64,000 nucleotides of DNA from Trichoplax adhaerens. Its lineage: Eukaryota > Animalia > Placozoa. The notes below the pieces were generated by a model that saw only the letters and a list, made by a program, of their open reading frames with translations, ran no database searches and was not told the origin of the DNA. Location of the stretch: the NCBI RefSeq assembly GCF_000150275.1, contig NW_002060945.1, positions 7,755,684 through 7,819,683 of the forward strand, in the 5' to 3' direction. The translations under genes were made by a program, and so were the position numbers. Below are positions 3,232 to 60,695 of this stretch, piece after piece (position 1 is the stretch's first letter; every line of letters begins with the position of its first letter).

Positions 3232-5021
3232 TCACATGAGTAATGATGCATAGACGTCGGCAATATGTTCATAGACTACAGCAATTTCTAAATGATGTGA
3301 TTCTAATTTTTCTGATCTAATATTAAGACATGTATCATGCATCATTAAGGCATTATTATACTTTGATTGTTTGCAATAGATAGTTCCAATATCGTCGTAT
3401 ACACTAGCTATTTTTAGATGCTTGTTATCAGGTAATAATTGTAATCAAATATCTAGGTATTTCTGATACATTTTAAAGGCATCATCGTAGTTACATTGTA
3501 CTTTATATATTGTACCTATAAACTCGTAGGCTAGCACAATTTGTAAATGTGTCTCGCCTAACTTTTTAACCTAACAGTTAATGACTTTTGTAACATAGAT
3601 AGAGCATCATCGTATCTAGAGATTTTATCATATGTTTCTCCTTTATCATAATAGGAGTAACCGAGAAGAATATGTTCCTTTCCTAATCATTCCAGTCTCA
3701 AGTCTAGCGCTTTGTAAAACAACTTCATAGCAACATCTTAGCGACCTAAATAGGAATAACTTTCTGCAGCGCTCTCATATGCAGTGGTATTATAAAACGG
3801 AAGAAGATCTTCAAAAATATCTAATCTAATAGCGAGAGCTTCAGCATACATGAAAGAACTATCTTCCTCTTTTAATTGATAGCGGTAAACATCTCCAATT
3901 TGATGATGCGATACAGAAACCGAGTATTGATTGGTAACTGGCCTTGTCATTTTAATCATTAATACTTTACGGAACATCGCCTTAGCATCTTCGTGCTTTC
4001 CAAGTTTGTAATAGCTTTCTCCAAGATATTCATAGATATTAATTAATGGCTGTCCAGTCATCATCATCAAGTTTCAAGCTTTGTGATATAATATTAAGCA
4101 ATTTCTGATGCATTTCGATCGCTTCATCATATCGTCCGAGGTGATTATATAAATGCCCAATACTATTAATAGTACTAGCGATTGGATATGATGATCGCCT
4201 AGTATATCTAATCGAATCTCGAAAGCCTTGTTATACATTGTGATACCATCTTCATATCGATGTATATGGTGACAATTATCAGCAAATTCATCATATAAAT
4301 CAGCAATCTGCAAATGATGATGGCCCATTTTGCTAATTTAATATCTAAACATTTCTAAAGCATAATCATCGCTTCTTCATGCCGATCGTCACTACAACGG
4401 ATCGCAGCTATCTGTTGAAATGTATTGGCAACTTTAATGGTTGCATTGGTGAGATTTTCCTCAATAATACCACGAATTTGTAAAGATTTTCCATACGTTG
4501 CTATAGCTTCATCACGATTGCCTTGACGATAGTAAACATTTGCTATGTTATCATATACTAGGGCAATGTCTTCATTATCATTGCCCAATAGTTCCTTTAA
4601 CTGCTTTAATGACTCGTTATAATCGTTGAGTGCTTCATCATAATCTTCTAACTTTTTGTTGTATCCTTTGCTTGCTAAGCATTTAGCTAATCGAATTTTA
4701 TCATTTATCCTTTTAATGCTATGTTCAGCTAGTTGACAATATTGTTTATTTTGTGTAATTTGATCTTGGTTCCCATATACAGCTGATAGATCACGATAAA
4801 TATCGTATTTGAATTCATCACGTTGATTATAATTCATTTTGGTAATTTTATCGGCCATATCAATAGCTGGTAAATAGTGGCTTTCTGTTTGTGAATTGTT
4901 TCCATCTTGACAGCAATCGAGACCTTCTTTCCATAAAAAATTGTACTGGATCAATGATAGATTGGTTTGGATGTGATGATGATGAATTATTATTGAGGTT
5001 GTGCTGATTCATGCTAGGCAT
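3232..5021 (-). pseudogene. Disrupted TPR-repeat gene
   Basis: TPR repeats continue across ORFs 4355-4954, 4074-4328 and 3738-4070 and down to about 3232. They are broken by in-frame stops (TAG 4355, TAA 3738, TGA about 3446) and by frameshifts, e.g. between 4354 and 4328, with no intron-sized gaps. Confidence 0.85.
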
Positions 5022-6968: not shown

Positions 6969-9900
6969 TCAATTTGAAGTCGATTTTTCTTCGGCGATTG
7001 CATCTGCAAGGATATCGGCTATATCTTGTCGATTAATTTGTCGTAGTGCTTGTATAAGTCGCTCTGTAGTTGCACGATTATTTTGTTTCCATTTATACAG
7101 TACGGCAATAGCTCTGTTATATACACCTTGATAATCAGCTTCAATTTCATAAATATTGATATGATGGTCTAATTTGGGAGCTAATTTTGTCCAATCTCGA
7201 TGAATTCGCGACGCTATTTCATAAAAGAAACGACTAGGATCTATTCGGATATTAGAACAGATGAAATGAATTTTACATAGTTATAACTTTTATCATTATG
7301 TTAATATTAATACTGATTTTGAAGTGCCAAGTTCTGCATATCAAATACATTTCTTTATCATGTAATATTAAATATTAGATTAAATAGTTGATCATTTGGA
7401 GAAACATGGATGAAAGAAAGAGATAGAAAGAAGCAATAATAAAACTAAATACAGGCAGCTAAAAGCGTTAAGTGTGTCGTTAAAACTTTTAAGATTATAA
7501 TTCAAACTTGCAATACTCTAAGCTAGTTTCTCTACTAGTGCTCACAATTTTTAATCATTATATTTGTAAAATTACCATCCGGTGATGCTGGATGATCTTT
7601 AGTGGGTAGAACAGGTAGCTTTTCTGGATCAGACTGCTTTGATGGGTTGGGCTGCCAAACATGACAAACTTTACTTAGTAAATTAAATAGAGTCTATATA
7701 CTTCACAACTTCAAGATTAATTATAGATGTTGTTCATTTACCTCGTTGGAATTTGCTCTCATCAAGAAACAAACCTTTGCATTAGTGTCTTGCTGCTGGC
7801 CTATAGGCTTTAGAAAGATTTGAGCTATATCATGAGCTGCTTTATTGATAACCTTGCAAACGTAATCGATAGCATGATAGCTATATCGATTCCAATTGAT
7901 AGAAATTGCCTGATTATTGAAATCAGTATCCAGACAATCTAAACCTCGTTTCTTAAATTTAGCTGTGTATTGACCATTTTCTAGAATAGTATTTTCAAGT
8001 CCAGTCGTAGCTAAACGTATCCTGATAAATGCCTGATCAATTCCTGACACGATAGCAGTTTCATCTTCATCTTTTTTAGCTAAGATTAATTTCATATGGA
8101 CAGTATCATCACTTGTGTCTATTTCGGATAGGAAAGCTAACGTATTAATTCGTTGCTGACAAGATGGAAAGATATGCTTGGAGATTAAATAAATGGTAGA
8201 TTTGACGTAGGAATAGATGACATAGTCAGAGAAATGGCTTACTGCAAAAGTAAGGCAATAATATCCATTTTTATCGCGGCTATATTCATACTCTACATCT
8301 TGCTGTTCCCACTTCTCACATCCATAGCTTCGACAAACGATTTTTATTGGGATATTAAAGTTGTTGTTTTTCTTAAGAAGTGAAACTATCTGGTTGATAT
8401 ATGGAACGGGGACTTGAAGTAAAGCTTTCCTTGTGCTATTAGGGGTAAATTGATACCCATCCGGCTCGAGGCGAACGATTGGTGATAACTGGATAAAGTG
8501 GTTACCATCAGCATCTTTCTGAATTGGTAAACCTTGATTATAAGGTGGATCTGCATAGTATACAGTCATGGTTAGGACGGCCTCGTCGGCTATACACTGA
8601 GCTGGAAGATGAAATTTTAATCCAGGTACTCCAGGCAAGGTTAAATCATGATCTTGATTAACTTGACAGTTATTCGATACCTTAGGATAGCCAGCTTTGG
8701 CTGTTGCGATAGTTGACGTTATATAAGAATAGAAATGAAATTGATGATTTAGAAAGTACTGTCAATGGCAAGAAATGTTCTCCTATGCCTGCGTTTCTTC
8801 TAGTTAAAAGTACTCTTCGATTTCAATGCACTAATAAATAGAATAGCTCTGTTATTACATAATGAGACTATAATTTAGAGAGGAAAGGTTGCGGATAGAA
8901 AGATACTGTCGAAAACTGCTCTCCTATCTCTTATGAAAACAAAATTAACCTGGATTCATTCCTGGAAATAAATGGCATTTCGCTGGATTCTTTTTTATTT
9001 TTCCTGATCTAAGATTATTATCTGGCTCAAAAATAATAGAAGAACATAAATAACAACAACATGTTCAGCCATTCACTTTTCTTATATTAAAGCAGCTGTT
9101 GTCTACTTGAATAGCTAATCCCATTCGCATTTACTTAACGCAACAGCATTATACGTATTTCCTTAATTTCTTAATATTGATTATTGGTCGTAGGTGTTTT
9201 AGTTAATAAATTGCTTACTCTTGTTCTTCCTGTTTCCGATGTTCTCGGTCAAGTGAGAATTAGAGCTCTTACCACCTGAAACAGTTCAATGTCAAAACAA
9301 TTTGCAATGCATCATTTATCATAAACAAACTCTCTCATGTTTAAGAAGCATACACTTAAATCGGCATGAAATATACTCATAACAATATTGATGTATAACG
9401 GGGCTTTTTATCCAAAAGTATTTCAAGCTCCGGTTTATAAACTGAGCCGGTAATGGTAACTATGACAAAGTCTAGCATAGCAAAACTACGATAATTATGG
9501 GTGTAAGTTCTATACAATTCTAAATCCTTTTTTAAATGCTAATTTATAGATTGAGTTGGTAATGATAGCTACGACAAGTCTAGCATAGAAAAACTGCGAT
9601 AATTATAATCATTAATTTAAGTTCTGTGCAATTGTTCCTGCTGCTATCATTTCAAGTACAATGAAGCAAGGAACTTTAATAATTAAACTTTTCAGAATTA
9701 AATATTACCTGTTGGAGAGGATCTCATTATGATACCTTTCTCTATCGACAATCCAGCAGATTGGTTAGGAGCTGCTGATATAAAATTAATGTAATCAGAA
9801 TAAGAGATTGGTATAAATATAATGTTATAGTAATAATAGATATTCAATCCAAGTTCAGTAGCCTCAATTCTCTGTTACTATACGCGTATTACTCAGTTAT

Positions 9901-12064
9901 AGAATAGTCCCAAACTAAATTCAAATCAGCAACTATATAATGCGCGATGCACCATTCTCTTTCTCTATCTTATACGAACAGTAATTAACTAATAGCCTAG
10001 TATTTATTGCAACCTTAGCCTATCAGATTTAGGATAAAGTTAGTTTAAGAATGGTGAGGATTAGAAAATTAATAGAATCGTAGATAATTAGGGTTTGCAC
10101 TATGAATGGTAGCCTTTAGTGACTTCAATCCGAAGGAGCTTTGCTTCTAATCATACCAATCAAATATTTACTAATTATAAGTTTACTTTCTCGCCATTAT
10201 TCACTTAGAGGTATACGAGCCTGATCATATGCTCATGATGTTAATCGATTCATGATTAGCCTTGATCTAGTAGCATCATCGTTTTTAACATGATATTATC
10301 ACTTTCTAATCGTATTTGCTAGGATAGATCATAAAACAGCCATAGCCTTACCGCTATGATTTGAAAGTAAGCCAGAAGAAGGTGCAGCAGGCGGCTTAGA
10401 AACGCTTTGACTTTGCATCTTTCGTTGATTACTTTTCTTTGAACTTGATGTTGAAGTAGCACCAAAAGTGTATGCATCGATAGAAAGATTTTTAGTTTGA
10501 GTAATCAACATTGATAATGATTTAGGCTTGTGTCACAAAACAGCTTTGCAACAAGATAACGTAATCTACGATCAATAAGTCAATTCCTTGAACTACGTAT
10601 CAAGGAACGATATCTGCACTATCACGAGCACTTTTGCTCTACTAGCAGACTACACAAAGACTTAAACGCCTCGTATTTTACGTTAAACACTAAGTTGGAC
10701 AATTCTTCTTTATTTCACGATATACTGCATTTATATACTATTCCTCAATAGTTCATGAGTCATAGTTAATACAATTAACATTAGAATCATTTACTGAATT
10801 AGATATTAATTTTAGCTACTGCTCTCTTAATGCAGACAACAGTATTTACGAACATAGACATGTAATAACTAATACAGAATAGTCAGATTACGATATGTCC
10901 TATCACGGAACATTTCCATGATAATTTACAGTCTATCATAAGTAAATTACAATCACAATGATTCGAACTGTAAGCAGATGATTTGCATTCCCTATTATAA
11001 CTATTATAATTTCAGTATGTGTATAAGTGTCACTGTCATAAAAAGTCAGTGCTATATTAAAATACAGTATATCCAAATTAGAAGTTAACTAAATAAGGAT
11101 AGTCTAACAGAATTATCCTAACATAGTTATTTCTACTGTAATACAGTATTTAACACTGTAACAGCTTGGTAGTTACTTTTCCCAGACTACTGTTTGTGCT
11201 ACCAGAAGCTTTCATGGAACTTTCCGCATTACCTCTATGTCTACTCATTTTATATCGTTTATGTTCTCTACTTGAGCTGAAGAATGACTTAATCATTTCC
11301 ATCATTTGCCTTTCCTTATTAGGTTTAAGTTGATAGTTATTTTCCGTCTCCTGTAAATATTCTGAATCATGGATAGACCCTTTAATCGATTCTTTATAGT
11401 ATCTTTCATTACTCGCTGTGGCTATGTAGGTGTGTGCTTTACTAGACCAGGTGTCAAGAGTTTCCTCATCACTACTCAATTGCTCTTGGTGATACGATGT
11501 AGATCCCTTAAGCACATCAAGTTGAATATGGCTGGCTTGATCCATTAGAGATTGTTGTGATTCCTCACTATCATCACTACTCTCCGATCCATGGATACCT
11601 TCTGCTTCGGTAATGTCAGATTTAGCCACATTACCACTTATTACAGGAGGTATGCTTTCCCTATGATTCCATTCTTGCTCAATATCACTTTCTACCTTAT
11701 TCGATAGAGTAGATTGAGGAGAGTTATAGAAATCCGTATTTAATAAGACTGACTTATCGTTGCTGCTGCTATCCCGCTCTTCATCAGTTTCTTTTCTAGG
11801 TCTCTCTGAGTGAAAGTCGCCAACAGGGATATTTGTATAATCTCTATCGTTTTTTTCCTTATTATCCTCTTTCATCTTGGTAAAATCTGATCGAGTATTG
11901 ACCTGATCATCCATCATCCCTCTCTTATCGCCACCTTTTGCCTTGACTAAACCAAAACGAGCATTGCTTGCATCGTCGATTACAATTTGAGAATCTTCTC
12001 GTTCTCTGGAGATAAACTCAGTTAAATCTTCCGATGGCAGAAGAAAATCCCTATGTCGTTCCAT
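6969..12064 (-). CDS. ZU5-UPA-death domain protein (PIDD/UNC5CL-like) with a long acidic low-complexity N-terminus
   Basis: Phase-consistent exons: 12064-11177, 10526-10352, 9774-9709, 9275-9219, 9021-8950, 8700-7742, 7651-7576, 7240-6969. ZU5-like segment '...QLSPIVRLEPDGYQF...LLQVPVP...FAVSHFS'. The last exon is a clear death domain: FFYEIASRIHRDWTKLAPKL...EIEADYQGVYNRAIAVLYKWKQNNRATTERLIQALRQINRQDIADIL. The 5' exons are less certain than the 3' ones, and the UPA assignment is by position. Confidence 0.8.
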
Positions 12065-13159
12065 ATTAATCCAAATGCTGTAACGACATTCGTTTCTTGG
12101 ATCCGAATAATGTGATATCAAGACACCATTTAAAAGTGGAGAACAAATGGTATAAAATTAGATGAAACAAACAAGTCGTGTTCAGCATGGATAATAAGAA
12201 GTGTTTTGATACCTTTTCCCGATTATAGTCTTCACTGAAAGATTTAATTATTATTATTACAGCCTAGATCTCTATTATTTTGCTTTCCTTAGTTGTGTTA
12301 AAATAGATATTGTCATGGAAATTACCCTATGATCATATAAACAATGGCTTACACTTGCAATATAGTATACGTTGTCTACTTAACAATTAACCCGGTTAAT
12401 TGATGACTAAAAATGATGAAATCTTGGTAAAGGACTGTAAATATTGCGAAGAATGCCAGATTGTGAGCGGTTAGCCCTCATCTTTATGGACCAAATTAAC
12501 CTACTAGTTAACATGGGAAATGGTCTATAGGATCATTCAAACTAGCGGAAACTGAATTATCAACACGTCTTATTGTCATATAAGAAGCAGATATTCTAAT
12601 AGCGATCCAGTGATGATTTTGTCATAATAGTATCCATTTAGTCATATAATTACTGATCAAATTGTATAGTTGAAATTGAAGGGGCAACGTTTACAGTATG
12701 AATTAAGATAATGTTAGTTACATAGCCTATTGAAAACTATCAAATGGTCCCAGACCTATTAATTTATATATAGATTAAAATAATTAATATCCACAAAGCC
12801 TTATGATTGCTTCCCTTTAGCTGGTGATTAATTAATGATCAGATCATAGTTAAAAATTAGATGCATTGACAGGTAATAGTACTGAAATAACTGGCAGGAA
12901 AAGAGACGTTGCAAAAGCTAGAGATAGGCAATGCAAACTAGTGAGTAAATAGGCTTAAAAGCAGACCAATATTGTCACCATTGTTACCTCAGCTCAAAGT
13001 ATCATAAAAGGTTACATTCAAGTTTACTATATGTAGATAGATGCTATGTATAGGCATAAGTTAGGTACAAAACGGAATATGATCATGAGCGTAATTGTCA
13101 ATTATCTAGGGAATTTCCGAATAAATCGCTCGTATAGCAGCTACCGTGACAGATTACAG

Positions 13160-13420
13160 CAGTGTTTAGATTTCACCATTCCTGTCGTTTACAAATATGT
13201 ACTGTGCTATAGCTTTGAATTTATGGAGATATATTTAAATGACCAATCTTTCATGCATTCTGTGGATTAAATTAGGATATATGTTCAATTAGTTCTATCA
13301 TTAAATTACTCATATGACTACTAACAGATTAAAGCAGTTCTTTCATTTCACCAGTCCTGTCGTTTATTATTATATACTGAACTATAGCTTTGATTTTATG
13401 GAGATATATTAAATGACCAA
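13160..13420. repeat. Direct duplication of about 100 bp
   Basis: 'cagatta.agcagt...atttcacca.tcctgtcgttta...ctatagctttga.tttatggagatatatt.aaatgaccaat' at about 13150-13246 and about 13325-13420. Confidence 0.7.
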
Positions 13421-14473
13421 TTCGAAATCATATCCACTTTATAAAGAAAAATGAGAGAAAAGGTTTGTCATACATTTAGTAGTTTGAATTAGAGTATACG
13501 AGTAACATTTAATTATGCCCTTCTTTTACATAAAAGTCCTACTATCAGTGAAGGAAATGAATGTTTTCTCAAGTAATTTTGACATCAAATACAATTTATT
13601 AATACATCCAAGGCGTTAGCTATTGGAATGATAAGGATCTGCAAAGTATTACATGCATTACTAGATACAGAGGTAGGGAGAAATTCTGACCACAAGGGTA
13701 TGAAATTAGCAATTGTAATTATTTCCTATATAAGCGTAAAATATTTTCGGCGAAACCTTAAATCGAAAGAACTTATATTTTAACTTTAGAATATTGGAAT
13801 GCATAGAATTAATTACATTCATAGATCTGTATGGCAAATAATGTTATACTCTGAATATAATACGATTATGATACTGTTTAATCTAATATAAAGTGGATGA
13901 GTAATCACAGTATCTCGATATTATTTTATGTGAACCAATAGAACATTGATCATTTACTAACATATCGCAATCAGTTTATTTCGGAATAATTTTTCCAGTT
14001 AAGGTCTGCTATCGATCTATGGACATAAAGGGGCTTAAACAATATTAAGGTAAGTTGTAAATGGGTTAATGGTCTCAACATTCAATAGAAATTAACATCT
14101 ACTTATAATTATCCACAACCAATACATTAAGAAAGTAACAGTAAAAGCACGCTTTACTATTAGCTTATACTGAAGGCATTTGAAATAGGCGACAGAAAGA
14201 TTGGAGTAATATTAACCAATGTACGAATGGGTTGACAGTCTCAATAGAGAGTAAAAATTGATATCACCTTATAAAACGAATGCAACGTCAATCAACTTAT
14301 ATCTATCCCACAGACAATTTTATTTAGAAAATATCCATCACATTAAGAACTCGCTATCAATCTGTACTAATAGGCAGCAAACTGATCGAAGTAATATTAA
14401 GCTAAGAGAAAAGCGAACGAAGAATCTAAACGGTGAAAATTAGAATTAATTTAAAAAATTGCATGGTTCATAG

Positions 14474-17400
14474 CTATCCACAACCAGTTTTGCTGAGGAA
14501 GCAACATTTCATATCGAGACCATGCTGTTGACCTATAGGTAGCAAAAAGATCCGAGCAATATTAAACCAAGGCATATGTGGATTGATAAACTTGCAATCG
14601 AAATCAAGGTGATAATAATCTTTCTGATTCCAATCAATAGAGATGATTTGCATGGCAGTATCTTGATTTAGGCATTCTAAATCCATTTTCCTAAATTCGA
14701 TTTGGTATGGACCATTTTCTAATATAACTTGTTCAAGGCCCGACGCGGCAAGTTGAGTCACTTTTAATTTGGTTCGGACTTGATCTGCAATAGCTCTCTC
14801 ATCAGCATTTATTCTCGCTAATATCAGTTTTAAGTGAGTAGTATGCTTACTACTATGAATTTCAGATAGATAAGCTAATACTTTAACTTGCTGCTGATAA
14901 GTTGGATATAGTCGCTTAGAAACAAATTGCATGCTTGATCGAATATATGAATAAACAACATAATCGCATAAGTGATTGATTGCAAATACCAAGCAGTGAC
15001 GACCATCTTTATCCAATTTATAATTATATTTAATCTTTTCCATTTTGCACTTGCTTCCTTTATCATTTAGACAAACAATTCTGATAGGGATTTGGTTAAT
15101 ATCATCAAGCTGAAGGAGTTTACATAATTCACTAGTATTAGCAATAGGTACCTGAAGTAATACGGGATTATTTCCATTTGATTCTAATTGACAATAGTCT
15201 GGTTCTAGTCTTACAACGGGGGATAAGGGAATTAATTGGTAGCCTACATGATTATTCTCATACTGAGTTAGTAAATCAAGCATGTACGGTGGATCTGCGT
15301 AGTAGACAGTCATTGTTATTAAAGTATTGTCCGTCATTGACGGAGAATTTAGCTGTAGCCTTAATCCAGGCACTTGAGATAAAGTCATAACTTGGTTTTG
15401 ACCACTTCGACAAATTTTCGATACTTGTGGATAGCCATCAAATGCTAAAATTAACATCATATTTTGTTAGTTGAAATTATAATTAGAAAAGGAGCCGGAT
15501 ATTATAGTAGTCTTGGTTGTTGGAATAGTAACGGATCAATCTAACTAATGAAATGACTTAGGATAATATTAGATTCTATAGACGACTACAGTTATGGTAT
15601 TCAAATGCACACTGTGCGAGTACTTCTCTAATTTAAAATACTTACCGATCTCTTTTTCTGCTACTTCTTCAGTTATTGTGGTCATGGAAAATTTACGCCA
15701 TGACTGACCAGTGCTATGAGCTAAATTTTGCGCTAATAAAAGTATAAGATATCATGTTTAGCAGACCTAATGAACTCGCAGTAAAGCGAATGCAATTCTT
15801 ATAATCTTATCGTTAAGGCTAATTTAGTAGAATACTGGCGATAAAGATTTGATAAGCGTAATTGACTTGCAATAAATTGCATACAATGTTCATCATCATG
15901 TCGATAAGCATAACTTTGCTATGAAGAGGAACTTAAAAGATCTGTTAAATGTAATCGAGTTGCATCCTGTTATTACGCTCGTTTTTAAGAGGACTATAAG
16001 CAGCAAACCCCATTTACTTGTAGTAAAAGGTTATATTGCTTATAATCTTGTAATTAACTGCTGAAGAATTTAATGTGGAACCTAATAAATTAGATATATT
16101 ATTTATTATTTGTTTTTAAGCTCAGTATTCCTATAGCATTAAAACAATTAGCAAGTTTAACCAGCTCGTAGCAAGAGAAATCTGCCCTTGTAGTCTTATT
16201 ATAAAATTCAATTTCATATAACAGTATCATCAGCAGACCTGTTAAACGTAATTGACTTGCAACCAAATAAATGTAAGGCCTATAATTTTATTTATCGGGC
16301 TCAAGTTTGCATAATAGAGATGTTAAAGGCCTGATAAACGTAACTAGCTTTCAACAAAGTGATATAATACAAATAGCTGCTAGAACAACGGGATAAAGCT
16401 TTTATAGTAAAAGAAACTCCTATTGGAGAAGTACAAGGAAATTTAATTTTTATACAATACAAATAGCAGTAAGAATGGTGCAGTAAAACTTTTATAGTAA
16501 AGAAATTCCTGTTGGAAAAGAACCGACAAATTCAATTTTTATCTAATAATTGAGTTAAATTAGTGCGCCAAATTTCATCGTTTTTGTACATCATTCATGT
16601 AAATTTTTTATGATAGTTACCAGTAAATATTAATCTTCCCTAAGCTAACTCAGCACAATGGAAAATTTAATATCTACATCTACTGATGTGGCTAATCATC
16701 TATGTCTTATTACAGATGATAAAAACGTGGTATGGCTATTACCAAACCAAGCTCAAAATCAATTTCAAGAATACATAGAGCTTACCATTGCGATCTTTCC
16801 TTTCCTGTCCAGAGACTGACTCTATTAATAAATCTGCAGGTTCCGTTTGCCATTCTGGACATAAAAATTTTCCAATGTTAAAACAAATTTAGTAAACGAT
16901 AAGTAGTAAATGCAATATTCATTTGTAAACAAGTTAAACAATGTAAAAGGGCGTTGGAGTTAATATTAATACACTACTACTGTGCATTACCAAAGTAAGG
17001 TAATGGTTATCGAGAGGCCTACCTGGTTGCGTAAGCAATTCCTTCCTTCCTTTACTTGTAGACTGTGTATACGTAATTTGCTGATGTCGAGCTTTACTTC
17101 GAATCCTAGATGAAATTTGTTTGATCGCTTTAACCATTTGATAGTTGTGTTGTTTTTGATAGATTTGAGCAATATTATCGTAAATAGTTGTGACCAAGGA
17201 ATGATGAACTCCAAATAGTTGTACAGTGATAGCTAGAGCTTTTTGATACTTGGATAAAGCTTCATCATACTTGGCTTGATGTGAAAAAATACTACCCAAA
17301 TTATTATAGCAAACGGCAACATCGTAATGATTTGCTCCAACTAATTTTAATGTAATATCCAGACAATTTTGATACATAACGATAGCAAGATTGTATTTAT

Positions 17401-18223
17401 TCTGCTTAAAGTAGACATTACCAATGTTATTATACGAATTAGCAACATCTAAATGATGTAGACCCAATATTTTGATTCGGCTCTCCAATGCTTTCTCATA
17501 CATGGCAAGCGCTTTTTGATATTTCAATTCATCAAAATAAATGCTACCAATATTATTATAAGATGTTGCTATCAGTAGGTTATCCTTTCCTAACAGTTTC
17601 AGTGCTATACGTTGAAATTTCTGATACATTGATAGTGCAAATTGATAATTACATTGTTGGTAGTGGATATTTCCCATGTTATTGTAAAGGATAGCTACAT
17701 CTAAATGTTGATTTCCTAGCAATTTCGAATAGATATGCAATGATTTCTCATACGTTGTTAAAGCATCCTTATATTTGGCCAAGTCATAGTAGACGTTACC
17801 AATATTTCGATAGGAAATGGCAATATCGATATCGTGGTAATTGCCTAATAGCTGTAACTTAATATTTAGCGATCTTTCAAACATGGATAAGGCTCGATGA
17901 TATTTGGACTGATGATAATAGATACGTCCTATATGATCACAAGTTATTGCTACATCTAAATGATTATTCTCCAATATAATTAATTTAATGTCTAATGACT
18001 TATGATACATACAAAGGCCATCATCGAACTGCGATTGATGGTAATAAATATGCCCAATCTTGTCATAAATAACAGCAACCTCGATATGGCAGTTACCAAA
18101 TGATTCTAATTTAGAGGCTAATAATTTCTTATACTCATTCAATATTAGTTGAAGAGATCTTTGACCATTTTTTGTATGATCTTGGCTAGCTAAAGATTTA
18201 TTTATTGTAGATTCATTCTCCAT
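14474..18223 (-). CDS. TPR-repeat-ZU5-UPA-like fusion protein (no death domain)
   Basis: Exon 1 (18223-17023) encodes about 8 KLC-type TPRs and ends at a phase-1 donor, CCAG|GTAGGC. Two symmetric phase-1 exons follow, 16854-16786 (69 bp) and 15720-15646 (75 bp), both stop-free with AG/GTAAG ends. The last exon, 15444-14474, is paralogous to exon 8700-7742 (GYPQVS/GYPKVS, MTVYYADPPY, LSPVVRLEPD). Confidence 0.7.
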
Positions 18224-21200
18224 TGTGGATTGATCAGTAGTTCTTACTACCAGTTATTGTCGACGTTAATTTACTACAAATTACTATAACTCCAGTTATG
18301 CTGTCGATATTCAATTTCAGAATAAACTAAGACTGATCCGAATCCAATTATAGAATTTAGCTCCGGTGATTGTTGATTTCATCGACCCGTAGAAACAACA
18401 AATTTTGCAGTACCAAGGCGCAAACATAAGATTGAATAGAATTCTTGAACGAGTTTTGCTATAACTAGACCCAAGAGAAAGATTTATCGAAAAGATCTAT
18501 CGACTATTATCGTACTCCCAGGTATAAGATTCTTGTCACTCTTGTTAAAAATTGGCTAGAACTGTGTGATAAGTAGGCTATAATATTTACTTGATATTTA
18601 ATTGATTAACGAGTGGGTTAGATTTGAATCTTATAGGCTTATGACGAGTTGATTGTTATTCCTTAATCGACAATTGATTTTCGTTACATGAGCTCCGAGG
18701 AAAAAAATTTATTAGACATATCTAGCAACCATGTCGGATTCTTGCGGCTCGGAATATAAAATTGGGCTAATCTTGTAAGAAGCAAGTGCAAACTTTACCG
18801 ATGAAATATCAGTGTACCTATATATTTAATTCAGTGGTTACTGGACATTAACCTAAACTCAAATAGGATATGTACTATTCAATATCTTGAATCTTGGCTA
18901 AGCCAGTGATTTTATTACAACCAGGTAATATACAAGTATAGATTTATTTTGAAAAAATGATAAATTTGAATCAAAATTTTAATTGCCATAATTCCCTTTC
19001 CATGCTGTAGAAACATTGATTTGCAATCCAATTTGTATCGGTAAAACTTTTAATCCTAGTTAAGCCTGAAAATGTTGTTTCTGACTTAATCAGCTAATCG
19101 ATCTGATTATTTTTTTTATTATTCATAGCTGATATTAAGATGATAATCATAGAATGAGACTTAAACAACTCTATTTATTTTGTGGATGATTTTCAATCGC
19201 TGGTATACGGCCGAAAGTAAAGTTGTCAATTTCTTTCAAAGCCCCTATAATCGAGTTCTAAAATCAGAATGTATATGAGATTCCTAAAAATTATCCTGAC
19301 GCAATATTAGTCGATTTGATAGTTCTTGTAATATTAAATCAATAGCAGAAGAGGAATAGATCAATTAGTCATTTAGAAAATATCTATCTTCCTTCTACAA
19401 ATAGTAGATTTAGATTCAATTAGTTCTTATCCAATATTGATCAAATTAGGCTGTTTTCAGTATAACACTACATCCCAGTAGGATAGAAGATTAAATAACT
19501 TCTCTAATTGCCAGCAAGAATATTTGTCTCCTTTTCTAATATGATTAATTTCGCTTAGATAAAATTATTCTAAATCGGTTTCTCGATAAGTCTGGCTGTT
19601 CTTCGCATCGTACTCAAATTTATAGAAAATAGTAATAGATGATCAGTACCACTTTACCGAAGGTTAGTATTCTCTTAATTGATTATGAGTACAAGTCTGG
19701 GTATTTTTAATCTCAACAATATATGAATGATAAAGCAAATGCAGGAGCGATGATGGAGCAATTTCTGTGAAGGTCAATTTTCTATTATTCTTGTAATATG
19801 GATAACAAACTTGAATTAATTTGTCTGTATCAGGGATTAATCAAGCCTCATCTGTTCCCAATATTAAAATTAAAGAAAATGTTGAACAGAAGATAGTATC
19901 ATATCGTTAACAGTACATTTCGAATTCTGGCGTTCCAATTTAATGATGAGCATGAAATAAAAGTAGTCTAGTCCAAGGTTAATAATTTTTGACCATTTTC
20001 TTTCTATAAGCTATAAGAGTAGTAGAAAATAAGTAATATTCCTCTTACCGTTAATATTTTCCATTCGAGACAGGATGGATTATAATAAATTGAGTTACGT
20101 TCTTGAATAATATAATGAGAAGGGAAAGACTGAATTAAATACTATAGAGATATGGGATAGTATTTCAAGCACCAGCCGATGAAAGAGCTTTATTGATGGA
20201 TATTTTATAATGCCTCTCTTACCGATCGTCTACCGAGAAAAATTGCAATCTGCCAATGTTTGCACGTTGGATTAATAATGTCTAAGCTCTCTAAGAAATA
20301 GCTTATTGTCTTAAAAGCCATATCCTACTAAAATGGAATAATATCATATGATACTCCATCAATAGAACAAGTAATAATAAATTATCTTCAGCAATTAGCC
20401 AGAAATAAATTGGCGCCGTCATGCTGATCCTATCAATGTCTGTAAATTAATCCTTTTTAATAAGTACCGTTGCCTAGCATATTATAATTGCAGTCTTGAT
20501 GGAAAGAATAGAATTGATTTCATAACGTACGCATATTCAATGGTAACAGAGAATCAGAAGTGCGAGACAAGAACTATTCAGAAGACAGGATAATCCCATG
20601 TGAATGATGGATAATATTCAGCATAAGGCAATTAGTACCGCAGACATAGCAGCTGACAATTCAATTTTCAATCCCATTTCATGGAGATTGATTGCCTCTT
20701 CTATGCATAATGGATAATTGTCAGTACATTAATTTAGAAGAAAAGTGGACAATAATGAGAAAGAATCTGTGAGTAGTTTCATCACGAGTTTAATACTGAA
20801 AATCTTCGTAATGATGTTTTAATGTCAGCACCTACGTCATATTGCTGTTAAAATTATCTTGTAACCAGGTGTTTTAATTCATTCTTATTGGATAATTTAA
20901 TACTTAGCAGAGTAGATATTGACGCAAGATCAAGCAGACAATTTCATTATTTTATGATATCTACAGATAAAAACTTGCAAAAGAATCTCAACAATTAAAT
21001 TATTAAGAATCAGCCCATAGCAAAAGAGTCTATTCTAGGCTAGAAGTGCGATATTACACGGTACTGTATACATGTACCTAATTCATCGATAGTTGCTATC
21101 TATCCAATCTGATCTTGCTTAAGTCAAGTAGAATAGCTTATTTTCTAGGTGCTTACCCCAGCTAGAGTTTGACGCATAGTTTTGGTTTATAAATCTCTTC

Positions 21201-29200: not shown

Positions 29201-30479
29201 CATCGTATACGTTACTTTGGGTAATTGTAGATCAAAGCCTTCTCAACGTGTCCAACTTGATATTATTAATTATAATTAACAGCTAATAAGCGAATTTATT
29301 TCACTGGTATTATCGGATGCAGTTAACTTACCTGTTCGAAGCTTAACATTAAACCGGGGTAGTTGTAATACTGAATCCGTAAAATTATTCAGTAAGATCT
29401 GCAATACGCGTATGCATGATATTAAAATAAGACATTAACACCATATTTACCAGATTATTTTGCAATCGATCAATCTTCCTCTTCTTTTCGTATTAGAATA
29501 TAAAAATGGTGACTTACAGAATCAAGATCATCGTCAACGTCAGTTCTATTTACTAAGGAAGACTGAGGATTGACAATATCTTCACAGCCTTGAACTTCAT
29601 GATTATCTGCAGCATCGCAACGATAGAGATTTTCTCCTTCATATTTCTGTGATAATGATGAGATCAAACAGGTTAATGATTCGATTCTTGTAGATATTTT
29701 TATACAACGAAATTATGTCGAGAAGTAGCCTCTGTAATAGACTGCTACTGCAGTAGGATTGATAGCTTCGATATTTGAAAATTTATTTCTAAAATAGCAG
29801 TAGAAGCCAATAATTACTTTAGGTATGTTGTGTTGAATGAAGTTTTTTCAAGAAACATGCAAATTAGTATTTTAAATGCGCCTTTTGCTAACATGAGGTA
29901 GTCTATAGAATTCGAATGTTGATGAAAATGCATCAAATTGAACGTTCTGGCAAAATATCTTTAGTGAATTGGCTTTTTTAAATATCTGTATTATTCTGAT
30001 ACTTTGGCTTCTACTTCAGATACGCCCATAAATCATTTATAACACAGGAACATGCTGCAACACTCTTATGTTCATAGTCAACAATATTCCTTCAAAACTT
30101 ACTACCATGCTTGAACATTGATACAGCACTAAATAAAGTACGACAATGGGGTTTACTACTGCATCATTACGTCGGCAAATGTTGAGTAAAATCGTATTTT
30201 GATGAACTCAAGGGAAGATTTGAAAAAGCTATAAAGTTAAAATAATTATGGCTTAATAATCCATTTTACGTGTACTTTCTGTCTTGAATAGTAGAAAAAT
30301 CTTTCCTTTTGGGATCTTTGGAAATTACTTACAAAGTCGGCGCACCATGCACATTCCGGATTAGCAATACATACTTCACATGCCTTTAACGGCTGGCAAG
30401 GATTAGGAGGATCAATAACGGCTACTACGAGTAGATATGCCAATATTAAAAAGACTCGAACGTTTATAGCAATCATCAT
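23249..30479 (-). CDS. ITGB: Integrin beta subunit, divergent paralogue (multi-exon, intact)
   Basis: Signal peptide MMIAINVRVFLILAYLLVVAV; PSI domain (CIANPECAWC); betaI motifs [58 protein letters not shown]; Cys-rich I-EGF exons; TM ending AWK; tail ...ENPVYIRATTSYKNPMYHKNFDRNT* (exon 23326-23249). Confidence 0.95.
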
Positions 30480-32820
30480 CACAAATCGATCAAGACGACA
30501 GTCAGAAGTAACAAGGATACCGCAATTATTCATTCTAAAAAGCAAATCCATGATAGAGAGAAACAGTCTAATTCCCTTACCTACAGCTGAAATTCTGATA
30601 GTCAGTAGGCAAAGCAAATAAATTGATTTCATTTGAAATCAGCGAATGGCTTGAGAAGTTACTTGTTTTTAATATCAATAAAATTGAGAAGGAACGTCGC
30701 CCACATAAGACCAAAGGAAAAAAATCAACAAATATACCCGTACTGCATCGGCTAATATCGTACGTCGTAGGAGGTGAACGTTATTAAAATTGAATTTCGT
30801 TCAAGCTTTCTTTGCTACCAAAGATTGTGAATGGTTTAAGTTTAGTCGTTGTCTAAATCAATTCCTACAATCAATGTTGTATTGTAGTCTACTTTTGAAC
30901 ATTTATGATCGACCTTGTCTAAGAATAAATCTTGTTTTCATTTAAATGGATTATGATAGCCCTGTTTGAAATCAACCAATGGAATCACTTCATACCGTAT
31001 GTGGTCGTATAGCTATCCAAGTCATGAATTGAATTGGGCTAATTATGATTAGATAAGGGAAAAAATGTCCTTTAACGTCATTTTAAACTTTAAATAGATA
31101 CGATTCATGCCAATCGTAGAATTATTTCTTTTTTTACTGTTAGTACATTAGATATTTCTTTGCAGTGAATACCTAGAAGTCATGCAGATTCAAGACGGTA
31201 TTTACGGCAATTGTTTCTTTCCTTGTAAAGTGGGAGAAAAATCAGTTGGTGCAGGACACTGTTGAAATAATTCGTTTATTTATTTAATTAATGTACTTTA
31301 CTGGATCATTTCGAAACCAACGTTCATTCTTAATTAACATTAACATTATTTTTGCCCTACCATTTACTCGTATAACTTATCTGCTTTCACACCACGCCCA
31401 TGATTAGCAGCGTAAATATATTTTGTTGGATTATCGAATAGCTTTATCGCAATTTTCTTTCTTTCTGACAATTAGAACATAGCCGTTATCTCACGAGCAA
31501 AATTTAAAAAAATAAATAAACCAATTCTAAGTAAATTATTTATTGAACCGTTCAAACTAAAATTAATTAAATTATTGACTCCTTAACGTTTAGGGTGTCA
31601 TAGAAAGCCACAAATTATCCAGAGACTTTTAATAAGAGAAATCCTCGCTCTTACAAGTCCCCGATATTATTTCCCTTTTCTACTTTATCAGGTGTAGGAT
31701 ATTGAATGGGATCACGATAGTTTGAATTCATAGGCATGAAGGTCTTTTACACTTATAAATCATTCAAACTGTTATTTTTTACTCGATGTTCTACGAAATG
31801 CTTGTGTAGCTGCAGTGAAATGGATTTGTTACCGTATCAGTTCACATCATGTTGCTTCTCTTCAGTCTGTAGTCTACAGTAGTAGTAGTAATTCAATGAC
31901 AAAATAAAGTTCACCGGAATCATTCATTGCAATATGATTGGACTCGTTGCGGTAGTCTTCAATCAATCGTATCATTGATCAATGTTGTTATTAAGGCATT
32001 TAAGGAGTTGATATAGTAAACACTTTTTAGCGTCTACTGTAGTGGAATGGTTAGGATTACTGTAATCACTTGATGGTTAGCTCGAATGAAATTAGTTTTA
32101 TCATTCTAACCAGTGGCGTTACTATTTGTTTCCATTTGACTAATGAAATCGATTGATTCCTTTTTGCATTTTAACTGCGTGCGACTTTAAACTACCTAAC
32201 AATAGTTTAAAAGTTGTTTGTTGGTGATAATATCTAAGTTGACAAATGGATCTACTCATGGTCTAGGCTGGTATTATTAATTATTATTATTAACTTAAAT
32301 ACAGTATTGAGTCAATAGAGGTACTGTCGTTACAATTAGCTAGATTTCCCTTCAGTAGAACTCAGCTTAAAAAGAAAGAATTGTTTATCAAAACGGAAGG
32401 CTACTTAACTCAAATCTTTCTTTAACTAATTATATATCAATTATTGAAGTATTTTATCATTTGTACACCACGTACATGGCTCCGAATGATATGTTGCCTT
32501 GCAGGTTGATGACTAAATTAATTCAAAATATGAAGTAATAAAATTAGTATCGATCATTTTCCAAGCAGCCAAATAACTAAAGTGTACAGTGCAGTCAATT
32601 TTGCACCGAAAGAAAATCGCAATCTTATATACTCGTATGGTTAGTCCCTCCCTAAACTAGCTCAGAAAAACTGATAATACCAGGAATTTACTACTATTGG
32701 AATATGAATTCCATGTAGGAAATTTCTGAATTAAATGGGGAATTAGCAGTTTATTTTCGCATCGACAAACCATTGCGGATGTTTAAAAAATCCACCTCTG
32801 CGTCATAATCAGGTCCGTAG

Positions 32821-60360: not shown

Positions 60361-60695
60361 CGGAAGATCATTGGGGAGTTTTTGGGTCAAATTGATTTAA
60401 ACTAGTGACACCCTCGATCATGATAATACATTACTAATGTACTGTATTATTGCATGTCCGACAGTCAAAATCGTCTTAAGTCTTCAAATCAGCCGCGCCA
60501 TGCCAACCGTTGGGGGTGACACCAGTTCTTTGCAGAGATGACGAGGCGTTTCTCGCTTCTTGCTCACTAGAGTAGTACAAGTTGCAACTGCGTATTACGT
60601 GGTGTCAAGAACGTTTAAGCAGGGCCTCCAGGAGTGGAGAGTATTTCTATTTTTGTGTCTCTCCCAAGGTGCAAAGTCTCTATTTTTGCAGCATT

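What the first reader, a model, noticed from the sequence alone, without database searches (positions are those of the whole stretch)
6969..18223. TPR/ZU5-UPA/death-domain locus: a candidate PIDDosome-like sensor system using TPRs instead of LRRs
Seen: two adjacent, same-strand paralogous ZU5-UPA-like exons. One is joined upstream to about 8 TPRs and has no death domain; the other is joined downstream to a death domain. Further TPR genes and a pseudogene flank them. Established: PIDD1 is LRR-ZU5-ZU5-UPA-DD, and UNC5/UNC5CL/ankyrins use the ZU5-UPA-DD supramodule for cell-death or NF-kB signalling. Inference: this is a lineage-specific sensor (TPR) plus adaptor (DD) pair acting in innate immunity or cell death. 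I do not know this architecture as a described family.
Basis: partly seen in the sequence, partly recalled or inferred. Interest (0 to 1): 0.9.

Follow-up and report, generated by a model that had tools for sequence, protein, structure and literature searches.

The report
Placozoan PIDD-like ZU5-UPA gene pair
Two neighbouring Trichoplax adhaerens genes carry the self-cleaving ZU5-UPA module known from PIDD1, NLRP1 and CARD8, one fused to eight TPR repeats and one to a death domain; both are real and belong to a little-described placozoan gene family, but nothing yet shows that they work as a pair.

Summary
The window is Trichoplax adhaerens. It contains two same-strand neighbours already in public databases as uncharacterised proteins.

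- **Gene B** is TRIADDRAFT_54880: eight TPRs, then ZU5-UPA, no death domain.
- **Gene A** is TRIADDRAFT_54879: a disordered N-terminus of about 340 aa, then ZU5-UPA-death domain.

The two 300-aa exons are 44% identical, and Pfam does not recognise them. Three results show they are ZU5-UPA modules:
- AlphaFold models match ankyrin, UNC5b, NLRP1 and CARD8 ZU5-UPA structures (Z up to 13).
- A profile search reaches PIDD1-like LRR-ZU5-ZU5-UPA-DD proteins of other phyla.
- The HFS of gene A sits in the column of PIDD's second self-cleavage site. Gene B has HLC there.

The module occurs at about 15-20 loci in this genome, several of them next to TPR exons, alongside at least 110 death-domain exons.

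The fold, homology and splicing are shown. Self-cleavage, immune or cell-death signalling and sensor-adaptor cooperation are inferred.

This scan noted the same family before on two other pieces of this genome.

Verdict: a new variant of a known kind, of moderate interest.

The parts
17023..18223 (-). Gene B (TRIADDRAFT_54880) exon 1: start codon and eight 42-aa TPR_12 repeats; ends in phase 1 at a GT donor
   Evidence: Pfam TPR_12 E 5.8e-85. 100% tblastn match to P0060. Exact exon map. Donor read. RNA joint 17023|16854 in runs X5 and X10.
16786..16854 (-). Gene B exon 2, 69-nt linker, phase 1-1
15646..15732 (-). Gene B exon 3, 87-nt linker, phase 1-1; an alternative acceptor at 15720 gives 75 nt (4 aa fewer, as in the H2 protein)
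   Evidence: Joints 16786|15732 and 16786|15720 in X5 and X10. Exon map. P0060 is 775 aa and P0010 is 771 aa.
14474..15444 (-). Gene B exon 4: ZU5-UPA module followed by a stop codon; no death domain
   Evidence: 44% identical to the gene A module. Joint 15646|15444. Atlas neighbours are UPA/ZU5, FIIND, UNC5 and PIDD-like clusters, score 0.96. The same terminal stop occurs in H2 and in a distant placozoan contig, L006.
14966..14974 (-). Gene B H610-L611-C612, in the column of the ZU5 self-cleavage tripeptide
   Evidence: Alignment A2 column: HFS 32, HFT 7, HFC 5, HLC 2. Coordinates derived from the exon map.
11233..12064 (-). Gene A (TRIADDRAFT_54879) exon 1: acidic, Ser-rich N-terminus predicted to be disordered
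   Evidence: Exon map. AlphaFold pLDDT under 50 for residues 1-340. No Pfam hit. The H2 model uses a later donor and an extra exon near 10329-10511.
8950..9774 (-). Gene A linker exons 2-4 (9774-9709, 9275-9219, 9021-8950), all phase 1-1
   Evidence: Not tested with RNA.
7775..8700 (-). Gene A exon 5: ZU5 (about 8201-8698) and UPA (about 7790-8164). The H2-type donor at 7742 would keep the last conserved UPA strand
   Evidence: AlphaFold pLDDT about 90. ZU5 against ankyrin 3f59_D: Z 12.9, rmsd 2.9 over 138 residues. UPA against rat NLRP1 FIIND 7crv_B: Z 8.3. 4d8o: Z 13.2. Donor difference.
8228..8236 (-). Gene A H498-F499-S500, candidate self-cleavage site at the end of ZU5
   Evidence: Same column as the second HFS of LRR-ZU5-ZU5-UPA-DD proteins. 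In the model it lies in the loop between strands 490-496 and 501-508.
7576..7651 (-). Gene A exon 6, 76-nt linker between UPA and the death domain
   Evidence: The linker has low pLDDT (residues 646-676).
6969..7240 (-). Gene A exon 7: death domain and stop codon
   Evidence: Pfam Death, 53 bits, E 3.9e-14. FADD DD Z 13.6, ankyrin-G DD Z 13.0, PIDD DD Z 11.4, RAIDD DD Z 10.6.
3241..4954 (-). Flanking TPR_12 pseudogene: stops inside TPR motifs and two frame changes

Best explanation
The locus holds two tandem paralogues of a placozoan-expanded family built on a PIDD-type ZU5-UPA module that Pfam does not detect.

**Gene A** is a disordered N-terminus followed by ZU5(HFS)-UPA-death domain. It corresponds to the PIDD-C part of PIDD1 and has the layout of CARD8, with a death domain in place of the CARD. 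I infer this mechanism:
1. The protein cuts itself between F499 and S500.
2. The UPA-DD fragment stays held by the ZU5 fragment.
3. When the N-terminal part is removed or displaced, UPA-DD oligomerises.
4. It then recruits other death-domain proteins, of which this genome has many.

**Gene B** is eight TPRs followed by ZU5(HLC)-UPA, made as one spliced mRNA, with no death-fold output of its own. It is most likely a TPR-bearing, ligand- or partner-binding member that acts through ZU5/UPA contacts, as a regulator or decoy. It is not an independent signaller.

Shown: fold, homology, motif register, splicing, family size. Inferred: cleavage, oligomerisation, cell-death or immune role, and any A-B contact (my odds for real cooperation are about 0.25).
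For: - **Fold.** Foldseek's top six hits are all ZU5-UPA proteins, E 2.6e-7 to 2e-5. VIA-align gives ZU5 Z 12.9, UPA Z 8.3, 4d8o Z 13.2, NLRP1-DPP9 Z 8.8 and CARD8 Z 8.5.
- **Homology.** A profile of the module finds 56 proteins. Of the 58 aligned sequences, 29 carry Pfam ZU5, 15 carry LRRs and 13 carry Death. The PIDD1-like ones come from Owenia, Tubulanus, Branchiostoma, Oscarella, Antedon and Saccoglossus.
- **Cleavage motif.** HFS aligns with the second HFS of those proteins. PIDD cleaves after each ZU5 at HF/S, and CARD8/NLRP1 at SF/S at the ZU5-UPA boundary (PMC3210808).
- **Gene A layout.** Disordered residues 1-340, then confident ZU5-UPA and death domain.
- **Gene B transcript.** Splicing is seen in two RNA studies.
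- **Conservation of gene B.** Its DD-less end and Cys nucleophile are kept in a placozoan contig only 54% identical.
- **Family and partners in this genome.** 35 module matches, at least 110 death-domain exons and 24 CARD exons, including same-strand CARD-DD pairs.
- **Synteny.** The order is kept in Trichoplax sp. H2.
Against: - No protein-level evidence of cleavage exists for either gene.
- UNC5 and ankyrin ZU5-UPA-DD modules do not self-cleave, and UNC5b has Leu where gene B has Leu (PMC3210808). Gene B may therefore be uncleaved.
- Gene A's junctions and expression were not tested with RNA here.
- H1-H2 synteny is weak evidence, because the two lineages are 97-99% identical.
- Adjacency is what tandem duplication gives anyway.
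- No immune or cell-death phenotype is known. The placozoan immunity survey I read does not mention these genes.
Confidence: 0.55

Rival explanations
1. A true sensor-adaptor pair. Gene B senses a ligand through its TPRs and passes the signal to gene A's UPA-DD through heterotypic ZU5/UPA contacts, forming a two-chain PIDDosome-like complex.
For: - The two genes are same-strand neighbours, and the order is kept in H2.
- Their outputs are complementary: TPR without DD, and DD without a repeat domain.
- A second TPR-ZU5-UPA gene (52778) also sits next to a ZU5-UPA gene (52779).
- In NLRP1 and CARD8, UPA mediates self-association of the C-terminal fragment (bioRxiv 10.1101/2020.06.27.175497, abstract).
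Against: - Tandem duplication alone explains the adjacency.
- The modules are only 44% identical.
- The partner in the second pair has no detectable death domain and has HFA at the site.
- No co-expression or interaction data exist.
Confidence: 0.2
2. Non-cleaving scaffolds of the ankyrin/UNC5 kind. ZU5-UPA(-DD) acts as a closed, autoinhibited binding supramodule, and HFS is only an inherited relic. The genes serve cytoskeletal or trafficking roles, not immunity.
For: - The best structural matches are ankyrin ZU5 and ZU5-ZU5-UPA-DD.
- Gene B has Leu at the Phe position, as UNC5b does.
- Several paralogues have lost the nucleophile: HFA, ELA, GSS.
Against: - By sequence the module groups with PIDD-like proteins, not with ankyrin or UNC5. 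Pfam ZU5, which finds the canonical ZU5 loci of this genome, misses it.
- His-Phe-(Ser/Thr/Cys) is kept in 44 of 54 aligned sequences.
- Lineage-specific expansion with variable N-termini is typical of conflict or immune families.
Confidence: 0.15
3. One receptor made by read-through or alternative splicing. The phase 1-1 linker exons let transcripts join gene B's TPR exons to gene A's ZU5(HFS)-UPA-DD exons.
For: All linker exons of both genes are phase 1-1, and both ZU5-UPA exons start in phase 1. The genes are on the same strand, 2.4 kb apart.
Against: - RNA contigs run colinear through gene B's stop codon into about 1 kb of 3' sequence (13473-14504).
- X5 and X10 show no other joint and no loose end at gene B's exon 3 or 4.
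- Contigs do drop rare forms, and gene A lay outside the stretch I laid.
Confidence: 0.05
4. Gene B is a decaying fusion with no function.
For: It has lost the death domain and the Phe of the motif. A TPR pseudogene lies nearby.
Against: - The 775-codon frame is intact.
- It is correctly spliced in RNA from two studies.
- It is kept in H2 and, as an exon with the same end, in a contig only 54% identical.
Confidence: 0.03

Closest known systems
PIDD1 (LRR-ZU5-ZU5-UPA-DD), core of the PIDDosome
   Same: - It is the nearest family by sequence. The module aligns to the second ZU5 plus UPA of PIDD1-like proteins, with HFS in the column of the second PIDD cleavage site.
- Gene A has UPA followed by a death domain, like PIDD-C and PIDD-CC.
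- Gene B places a repeat domain N-terminal to ZU5-UPA, as PIDD1 does.
   Different: - It has one ZU5 and one cleavage motif, not two.
- It has TPRs or a disordered region instead of LRRs.
- The repeat-bearing protein has no death domain.
- No LRR-ZU5-ZU5 gene was found in this genome.
- Partners equivalent to RAIDD and caspase-2 are not established.
CARD8 and NLRP1 (FIIND = ZU5-UPA, followed by CARD)
   Same: - Gene A has the CARD8 layout: a disordered N-terminus, self-cleaving-type ZU5, UPA and a C-terminal death-fold domain.
- The structures match: rat NLRP1 FIIND Z 8.1-8.8, CARD8 Z 7.6-8.5.
- Atlas neighbours include FIIND clusters.
   Different: - The output is a death domain, not a CARD.
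- The motif is HFS, not SFS.
- Pfam FIIND does not hit.
- DPP9-type restraint and activation by N-terminal degradation are unknown here.
UNC5, UNC5CL and ankyrin ZU5-UPA-DD supramodule
   Same: They share the same three folds in the same order. These are the best structural hits: 4d8o Z 13.2, 3f59 Z 12.9, 3g5b Z 9.2.
   Different: - There is no detectable sequence match to them.
- Pfam ZU5 and UPA models miss the module.
- There is no transmembrane, Ig/TSP or ankyrin-repeat part.
Placozoan NLR-like NB-ARC/NACHT proteins with TPR or WD40 repeats (Kamm et al. 2019, PMC6321704)
   Same: They also show TPR_12-type repeats combined with death-fold signalling domains in a lineage-specific expansion.
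   Different: There is no NTPase domain here. ZU5-UPA takes the central place. That paper does not mention ZU5 or PIDD.

Membership tests
ZU5-UPA(-DD) superfamily | ZU5 beta-sandwich fold | tested here: met
Gene A residues 344-509 against ankyrin ZU5 3f59_D: Z 12.9, rmsd 2.9 over 138 residues. 3ud2: Z 12.1.
ZU5-UPA(-DD) superfamily | UPA fold directly after ZU5 | tested here: met
   Residues 522-646 against rat NLRP1 FIIND chain B: Z 8.3, rmsd 3.3 over 110 residues. 4d8o and 6m3q span both domains, Z 13. For gene B: Atlas UPA/ZU5 clusters, score 0.96.
ZU5-UPA(-DD) superfamily | C-terminal death domain | tested here: met
   Met for gene A: Pfam Death 53 bits, FADD DD Z 13.6. Not met for gene B: a stop follows UPA, RNA runs colinear across it, and there is no DD exon nearby.
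ZU5-UPA(-DD) superfamily | Match to the Pfam ZU5, UPA or FIIND models | tested here: not met
   No hit at E 0.1 for either exon. Membership rests on the profile search that reaches Pfam-ZU5 proteins and on structure.
PIDD1 orthologue | N-terminal leucine-rich repeats | tested here: not met
   TPR_12 in gene B, a disordered region in gene A.
PIDD1 orthologue | Two ZU5 domains, each ending in HFS | tested here: not met
   There is one ZU5 and one motif per gene. PIDD1-like hits have two HFS about 150 residues apart.
PIDD1 orthologue | Death domain that assembles with RAIDD and caspase-2 | not testable with these tools
   Only leads: same-strand CARD-DD exon pairs elsewhere in the genome.
Self-cleaving ZU5 (PIDD, UNC5CL, NLRP1, CARD8) | His/Ser-Phe-Ser tripeptide at the ZU5-UPA boundary, before a long beta strand | tested here: met
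   Gene A H498-F-S500 lies in register with the PIDD-like second site, in the loop before strand 501-508. Gene B has H-L-C, which is inconclusive.
Self-cleaving ZU5 (PIDD, UNC5CL, NLRP1, CARD8) | Actual autoproteolysis that depends on the Ser/Cys nucleophile | not testable with these tools
   This needs protein expression and point mutants.
FIIND proteins (NLRP1, CARD8) | C-terminal CARD after UPA | tested here: not met
   A death domain, not a CARD.

The most novel reading that the evidence does not exclude
Placozoans run a tripwire system of the NLRP1/CARD8 kind on a death-domain chassis. Gene A is pre-cut at HF|S, and loss of its long disordered N-terminus (by a pathogen protease or by degradation) frees UPA-DD to nucleate a death-domain signalling complex. 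The DD-less TPR-ZU5-UPA neighbour captures or releases that fragment through UPA/ZU5 contacts in response to a TPR ligand. If so, activation by N-terminal degradation would date to before the split of placozoans from cnidarians and bilaterians.
Probability: 0.12. Interest if true: 0.85.

Novelty: new variant of a known kind. Interest (0 to 1): 0.55.

Why it matters
ZU5-UPA followed by a death-fold domain is the working core of PIDD1, NLRP1 and CARD8, and its history outside vertebrates is poorly charted. A 2024 survey even suggested that PIDD is vertebrate-specific (PMC11463336).

This locus shows three things:
- An early-branching animal has expanded a PIDD-type module that standard domain models miss.
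- It keeps the self-cleavage motif in most copies.
- It has joined the module to different N-terminal parts: TPRs, a death domain, disordered regions and large unknown domains.

That gives a simple system in which to ask whether self-cleavage-gated death-fold signalling is ancient. It also shows that domain-based censuses of placozoan immune genes undercount this class.

Tried and rejected
- **Pfam on the two paralogous exons:** only noise.
- **Profile of the module against PDB sequences:** no hit even at E 10. The fold had to come from models.
- **First AlphaFold model from 9 sequences:** mediocre (pLDDT 64.8). It was replaced by one built on 58 sequences.
- **A 3440-aa 'open frame' at C1414:13.247 Mb:** it looked like a giant TPR-ZU5-UPA-DD gene but is an assembly gap of N.
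- **Long TPR ORF at C1413:** fetched to see whether gene B's TPR type is the NLR type. It is TPR only, with no NTPase among the 25 best Pfam families shown, so I make no NLR link.
- **Contig C1295 (TPR, module and DD in order):** broken by stops, so not a clean example.
- **Loci C1400 and C1391:** these show other N-terminal parts, but I did not build gene models.
- **Runs X1 and X3:** listed as possible RNA, they behave as genomic DNA, with flat cover and no joints. They give no expression evidence.
- **Search for full-length relatives of gene B:** found only Trichoplax proteins. The word filter and length window mean this does not show absence elsewhere.
- **MAFFT placement of the pre-ZU5 linkers** under the first HFS strand of PIDD-like proteins: too weak to claim a relic first ZU5.

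Full report
**What the window is.** The sequence is AT-rich (about 32% GC). Its ORFs match Trichoplax adhaerens proteins at 100% identity. The window lies at C1412:7755684-7819683 of a 105.6-Mb assembly.

The finding covers two consecutive public gene models on the minus strand:
- **Gene B**, TRIADDRAFT_54880 (P0060, 775 aa). Its Trichoplax sp. H2 orthologue, P0010, is labelled 'Nephrocystin-3'.
- **Gene A**, TRIADDRAFT_54879 (P0008, 766 aa), labelled 'Death domain-containing protein'.

A script that demands exact translation and GT..AG introns reproduces both proteins from the window:
- Gene B: 18223-17023, 16854-16786, 15732-15646, 15444-14474.
- Gene A: 12064-11233, 9774-9709, 9275-9219, 9021-8950, 8700-7775, 7651-7576, 7240-6969.

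I built no joined coding sequence of my own. All work on whole proteins used the database proteins by their ids. The alternative H2-type model of gene A was neither joined nor folded.

**Checking the observation.**
- The two long exons are 44% identical (E 5e-88).
- The upstream ORF has eight 42-aa TPR_12 units.
- The downstream exon is a death domain: Pfam Death 53 bits against a cut-off of 22.6.
- A TPR gene at about 3241-4954 has stops inside TPR motifs and changes frame twice, so it is a pseudogene. A TPR fragment sits at 2-304.

**Splicing.** I laid contigs of four runs on 12500-18400.
- X1 and X3 cover everything evenly without joints, so they behave as genomic DNA.
- X5 (a 2018 study) and X10 (a recorded RNA-Seq library from 2021) cover mainly the exons, plus a stretch of about 1 kb downstream of the stop and a few short intron-located contigs. 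Both carry the same four joints, all GT..AG on the minus strand: 17023|16854, 16786|15732, 16786|15720 and 15646|15444.
- The donor and acceptor can be read directly.
- The TPR ORF is therefore spliced 90 nt before its apparent end at 16934 and joined to the ZU5-UPA exon.
- The 12-nt alternative acceptor explains the 775-aa and 771-aa forms.
- Contigs continue colinear across gene B's stop codon down to about 13473. The genome-wide Death search finds no death-domain exon between the genes. The lack of a death domain in gene B is therefore real.

**Is the module ZU5-UPA?** Sequence models say nothing. Pfam gives noise, and a profile against all PDB sequences gives no hit. Three other lines agree.

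1. *Profile search.* A profile of nine placozoan sequences, searched against 1.8 billion proteins, finds 56 hits. Beyond the placozoan copies these are PIDD1-like proteins with LRRs, Pfam ZU5 and Death. They come from an annelid, a nemertean, amphioxus, a sponge, a crinoid and a hemichordate, with E down to 2e-13. Of the 58 aligned sequences, 29 carry Pfam ZU5, 15 carry LRRs and 13 carry Death.
The second model, of P0008 with 58 sequences, has pLDDT about 90 over residues 341-645 and 677-766, and under 50 over residues 1-340. VIA-align results on it:
   - ZU5, residues 344-509, against ankyrin ZU5: Z 12.9, rmsd 2.9 over 138 residues.
   - UPA, residues 522-646, against rat NLRP1 FIIND: Z 8.3.
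   - Ankyrin-B ZU5-ZU5-UPA-DD: Z 13.2 over 306 residues.
   - UNC5b Z 9.2, NLRP1-DPP9 Z 8.8, CARD8 Z 8.5.
   - Death domain against FADD Z 13.6, ankyrin-G Z 13.0, PIDD Z 11.4, RAIDD Z 10.6.
3. *Gene B on its own.* For residues 430-775 of gene B, the protein atlas returns UPA/ZU5, FIIND, UNC5 and LRR-ZU5-Death clusters (score 0.96).

**The cleavage motif.** PIDD1-like hits carry two HFS motifs about 150 residues apart.
- In the 58-sequence alignment, gene A's H498-F-S500 (window 8236-8228) and gene B's H610-L-C612 (14974-14966) fall in the column of the second motif.
- That column reads HFS 32, HFT 7, HFC 5, HLC 2 and other 8.
- In the model the tripeptide lies in the loop before a long strand at the ZU5-UPA boundary.
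- This is the position at which PIDD (HF/S) and CARD8/NLRP1 (SF/S) cut themselves. The cut depends on the Ser and on the buried Phe (PMC3210808).
- Gene B's Cys is a plausible nucleophile, since Cys and Thr variants occur in PIDD-like proteins too. Its Leu at the Phe position is what non-cleaving UNC5b has. Its competence is therefore open.
- A genomic contig from a public run (L006) carries an exon only 54% identical to gene B's. It has HFC and the same terminal stop. The DD-less, Cys-type form is therefore old within placozoans and is maintained.

**Family context.**
- The module matches 35 places in the genome. About 15 are full-length, and many lie in a cluster at C1414:12.54-13.25 Mb.
- Pfam ZU5 finds only three loci.
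- Death-domain exons number at least 110, and CARD exons 24.
- Most modules have a death-domain exon just downstream. Some have one upstream (P0003, P0004).
- TPR exons precede the module at other loci too: TRIADDRAFT_52778 (QFT at the site), which lies just downstream of 52779 (HFA); a TPR ORF upstream of 52770; and the C1391 locus matching the 1876-aa H2 protein.
- Other copies follow large ORFs with no known domain.
- A search with an Owenia PIDD-like protein matches only its residues 410-710 here, so I found no LRR-ZU5-ZU5 gene.
- Gene order (integrin beta, gene B, gene A, TPR gene) is the same in Trichoplax sp. H2. That lineage is 97-99% identical, so this says little.

**How it most likely works.** Gene A has the layout of PIDD-C and of CARD8: a disordered N-terminus, ZU5 with an intact cleavage motif, UPA and a death-fold output. 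By analogy I infer self-cleavage at F499|S500, retention of UPA-DD by the ZU5 fragment, and signalling by death-domain oligomerisation once the N-terminal part is lost. Gene B cannot signal through a death fold. I take it for a TPR-bearing binding or regulatory member that acts through ZU5/UPA contacts. None of these steps has been shown. My odds that the two proteins truly cooperate are about 0.25. The alternatives are independent function, non-cleaving scaffolds, or a rare read-through transcript.

**Known or new.** The proteins have been public since 2008 without a name. In the searchable literature I found nothing on ZU5, UPA or PIDD in placozoans:
- The placozoan immunity survey does not mention them (PMC6321704).
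- Aravind's group notes expanded ZU5 proteins in sponges, and TRADD-N fusions to FIIND and UPA-ZU5, in other animals.
- This scan had already noted the family on two other pieces of this genome, including a reported single gene with 34 TPRs joined to ZU5-UPA-Death. I did not verify that gene.

I therefore class the locus as a new variant of a known kind. The module is known. The TPR fusion without a death domain, and the CARD8-like form with a death domain, are not described.

**Limits.**
- All runs laid were contigs, which show presence but not level and not rare isoforms.
- Genome counts are lower bounds from six-frame searches.

Noticed in passing
P0030 (Owenia fusiformis), P0034 (Tubulanus polymorphus), P0047 (Oscarella pearsei), P0036, P0051, P0058: Proteins with LRRs, Pfam ZU5 and a death domain (Pfam checked for P0030 and P0034), and with two HFS motifs about 150 residues apart in five of the six listed (P0058 has NFC at the second site), occur in an annelid, a nemertean, a sponge, amphioxus, a crinoid and a hemichordate. 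A 2024 paper (PMC11463336) reports no PIDD in lophotrochozoans and suggests it is vertebrate-specific. These hits argue against that.
   Followed up: partly
window 7742-7775 and about 10329-10511, minus strand: The T. adhaerens model of gene A uses a donor at 7775, which drops the last conserved UPA strand (11 aa). The H2 model and the paralogues use the donor at 7742. The H2 model also has a later exon-1 donor and an extra N-terminal exon. The 2008 model is probably wrong at these points.
   Followed up: partly
window 15720 and 15732, minus strand: Alternative 3' splice sites 12 nt apart in gene B's exon 3 are both present in RNA contigs of two studies.
   Followed up: yes
window 13473-14504: RNA contigs of run X5 continue for about 1 kb past gene B's stop codon. 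This is either a long 3' UTR or a separate transcript upstream of gene A.
   Followed up: no
G000:C1408:2458570-2460073 and G000:C1404:1707760-1709421: A CARD exon is followed about 1 kb downstream, on the same strand, by a death-domain exon. These are candidate RAIDD-like two-part adaptors.
   Followed up: no
G000:C1414:12555392-12556366 and 12558390-12559364: Two module copies with identical scores lie 3 kb apart (TRIADDRAFT_52770, whose model is a perfect tandem of two modules). This is either a very recent duplication or an assembly artefact. A 511-aa TPR open frame lies just upstream.
   Followed up: no
G000 whole genome: There are at least 131 matches at E 1e-30 or better to gene B's TPR array, many inside open frames of 1100-1700 aa. 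One ORF I fetched (1389 aa) is TPR from end to end, with 27 TPR_12 units. Two more TPR genes lie just left of the window (C1412:7745183-7755081).
   Followed up: partly
G000:C1414:13238354-13247644: An assembly gap of N directly upstream of the TRIADDRAFT_52843 module makes six-frame tools report a false 3440-aa open frame.
   Followed up: yes
window 8950-9021 and 15646-15732, minus strand: MAFFT places the short exons before each ZU5 under the strand that carries the first HFS of PIDD-like proteins. They could be relics of a lost first ZU5, but the similarity is too weak to claim.
   Followed up: partly
window 30246-30632 and 60582-61289: Upstream neighbours include an integrin beta gene (PSI domain exon) and a pyridoxal-phosphate-dependent enzyme exon. 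They are unrelated to the finding.
   Followed up: no
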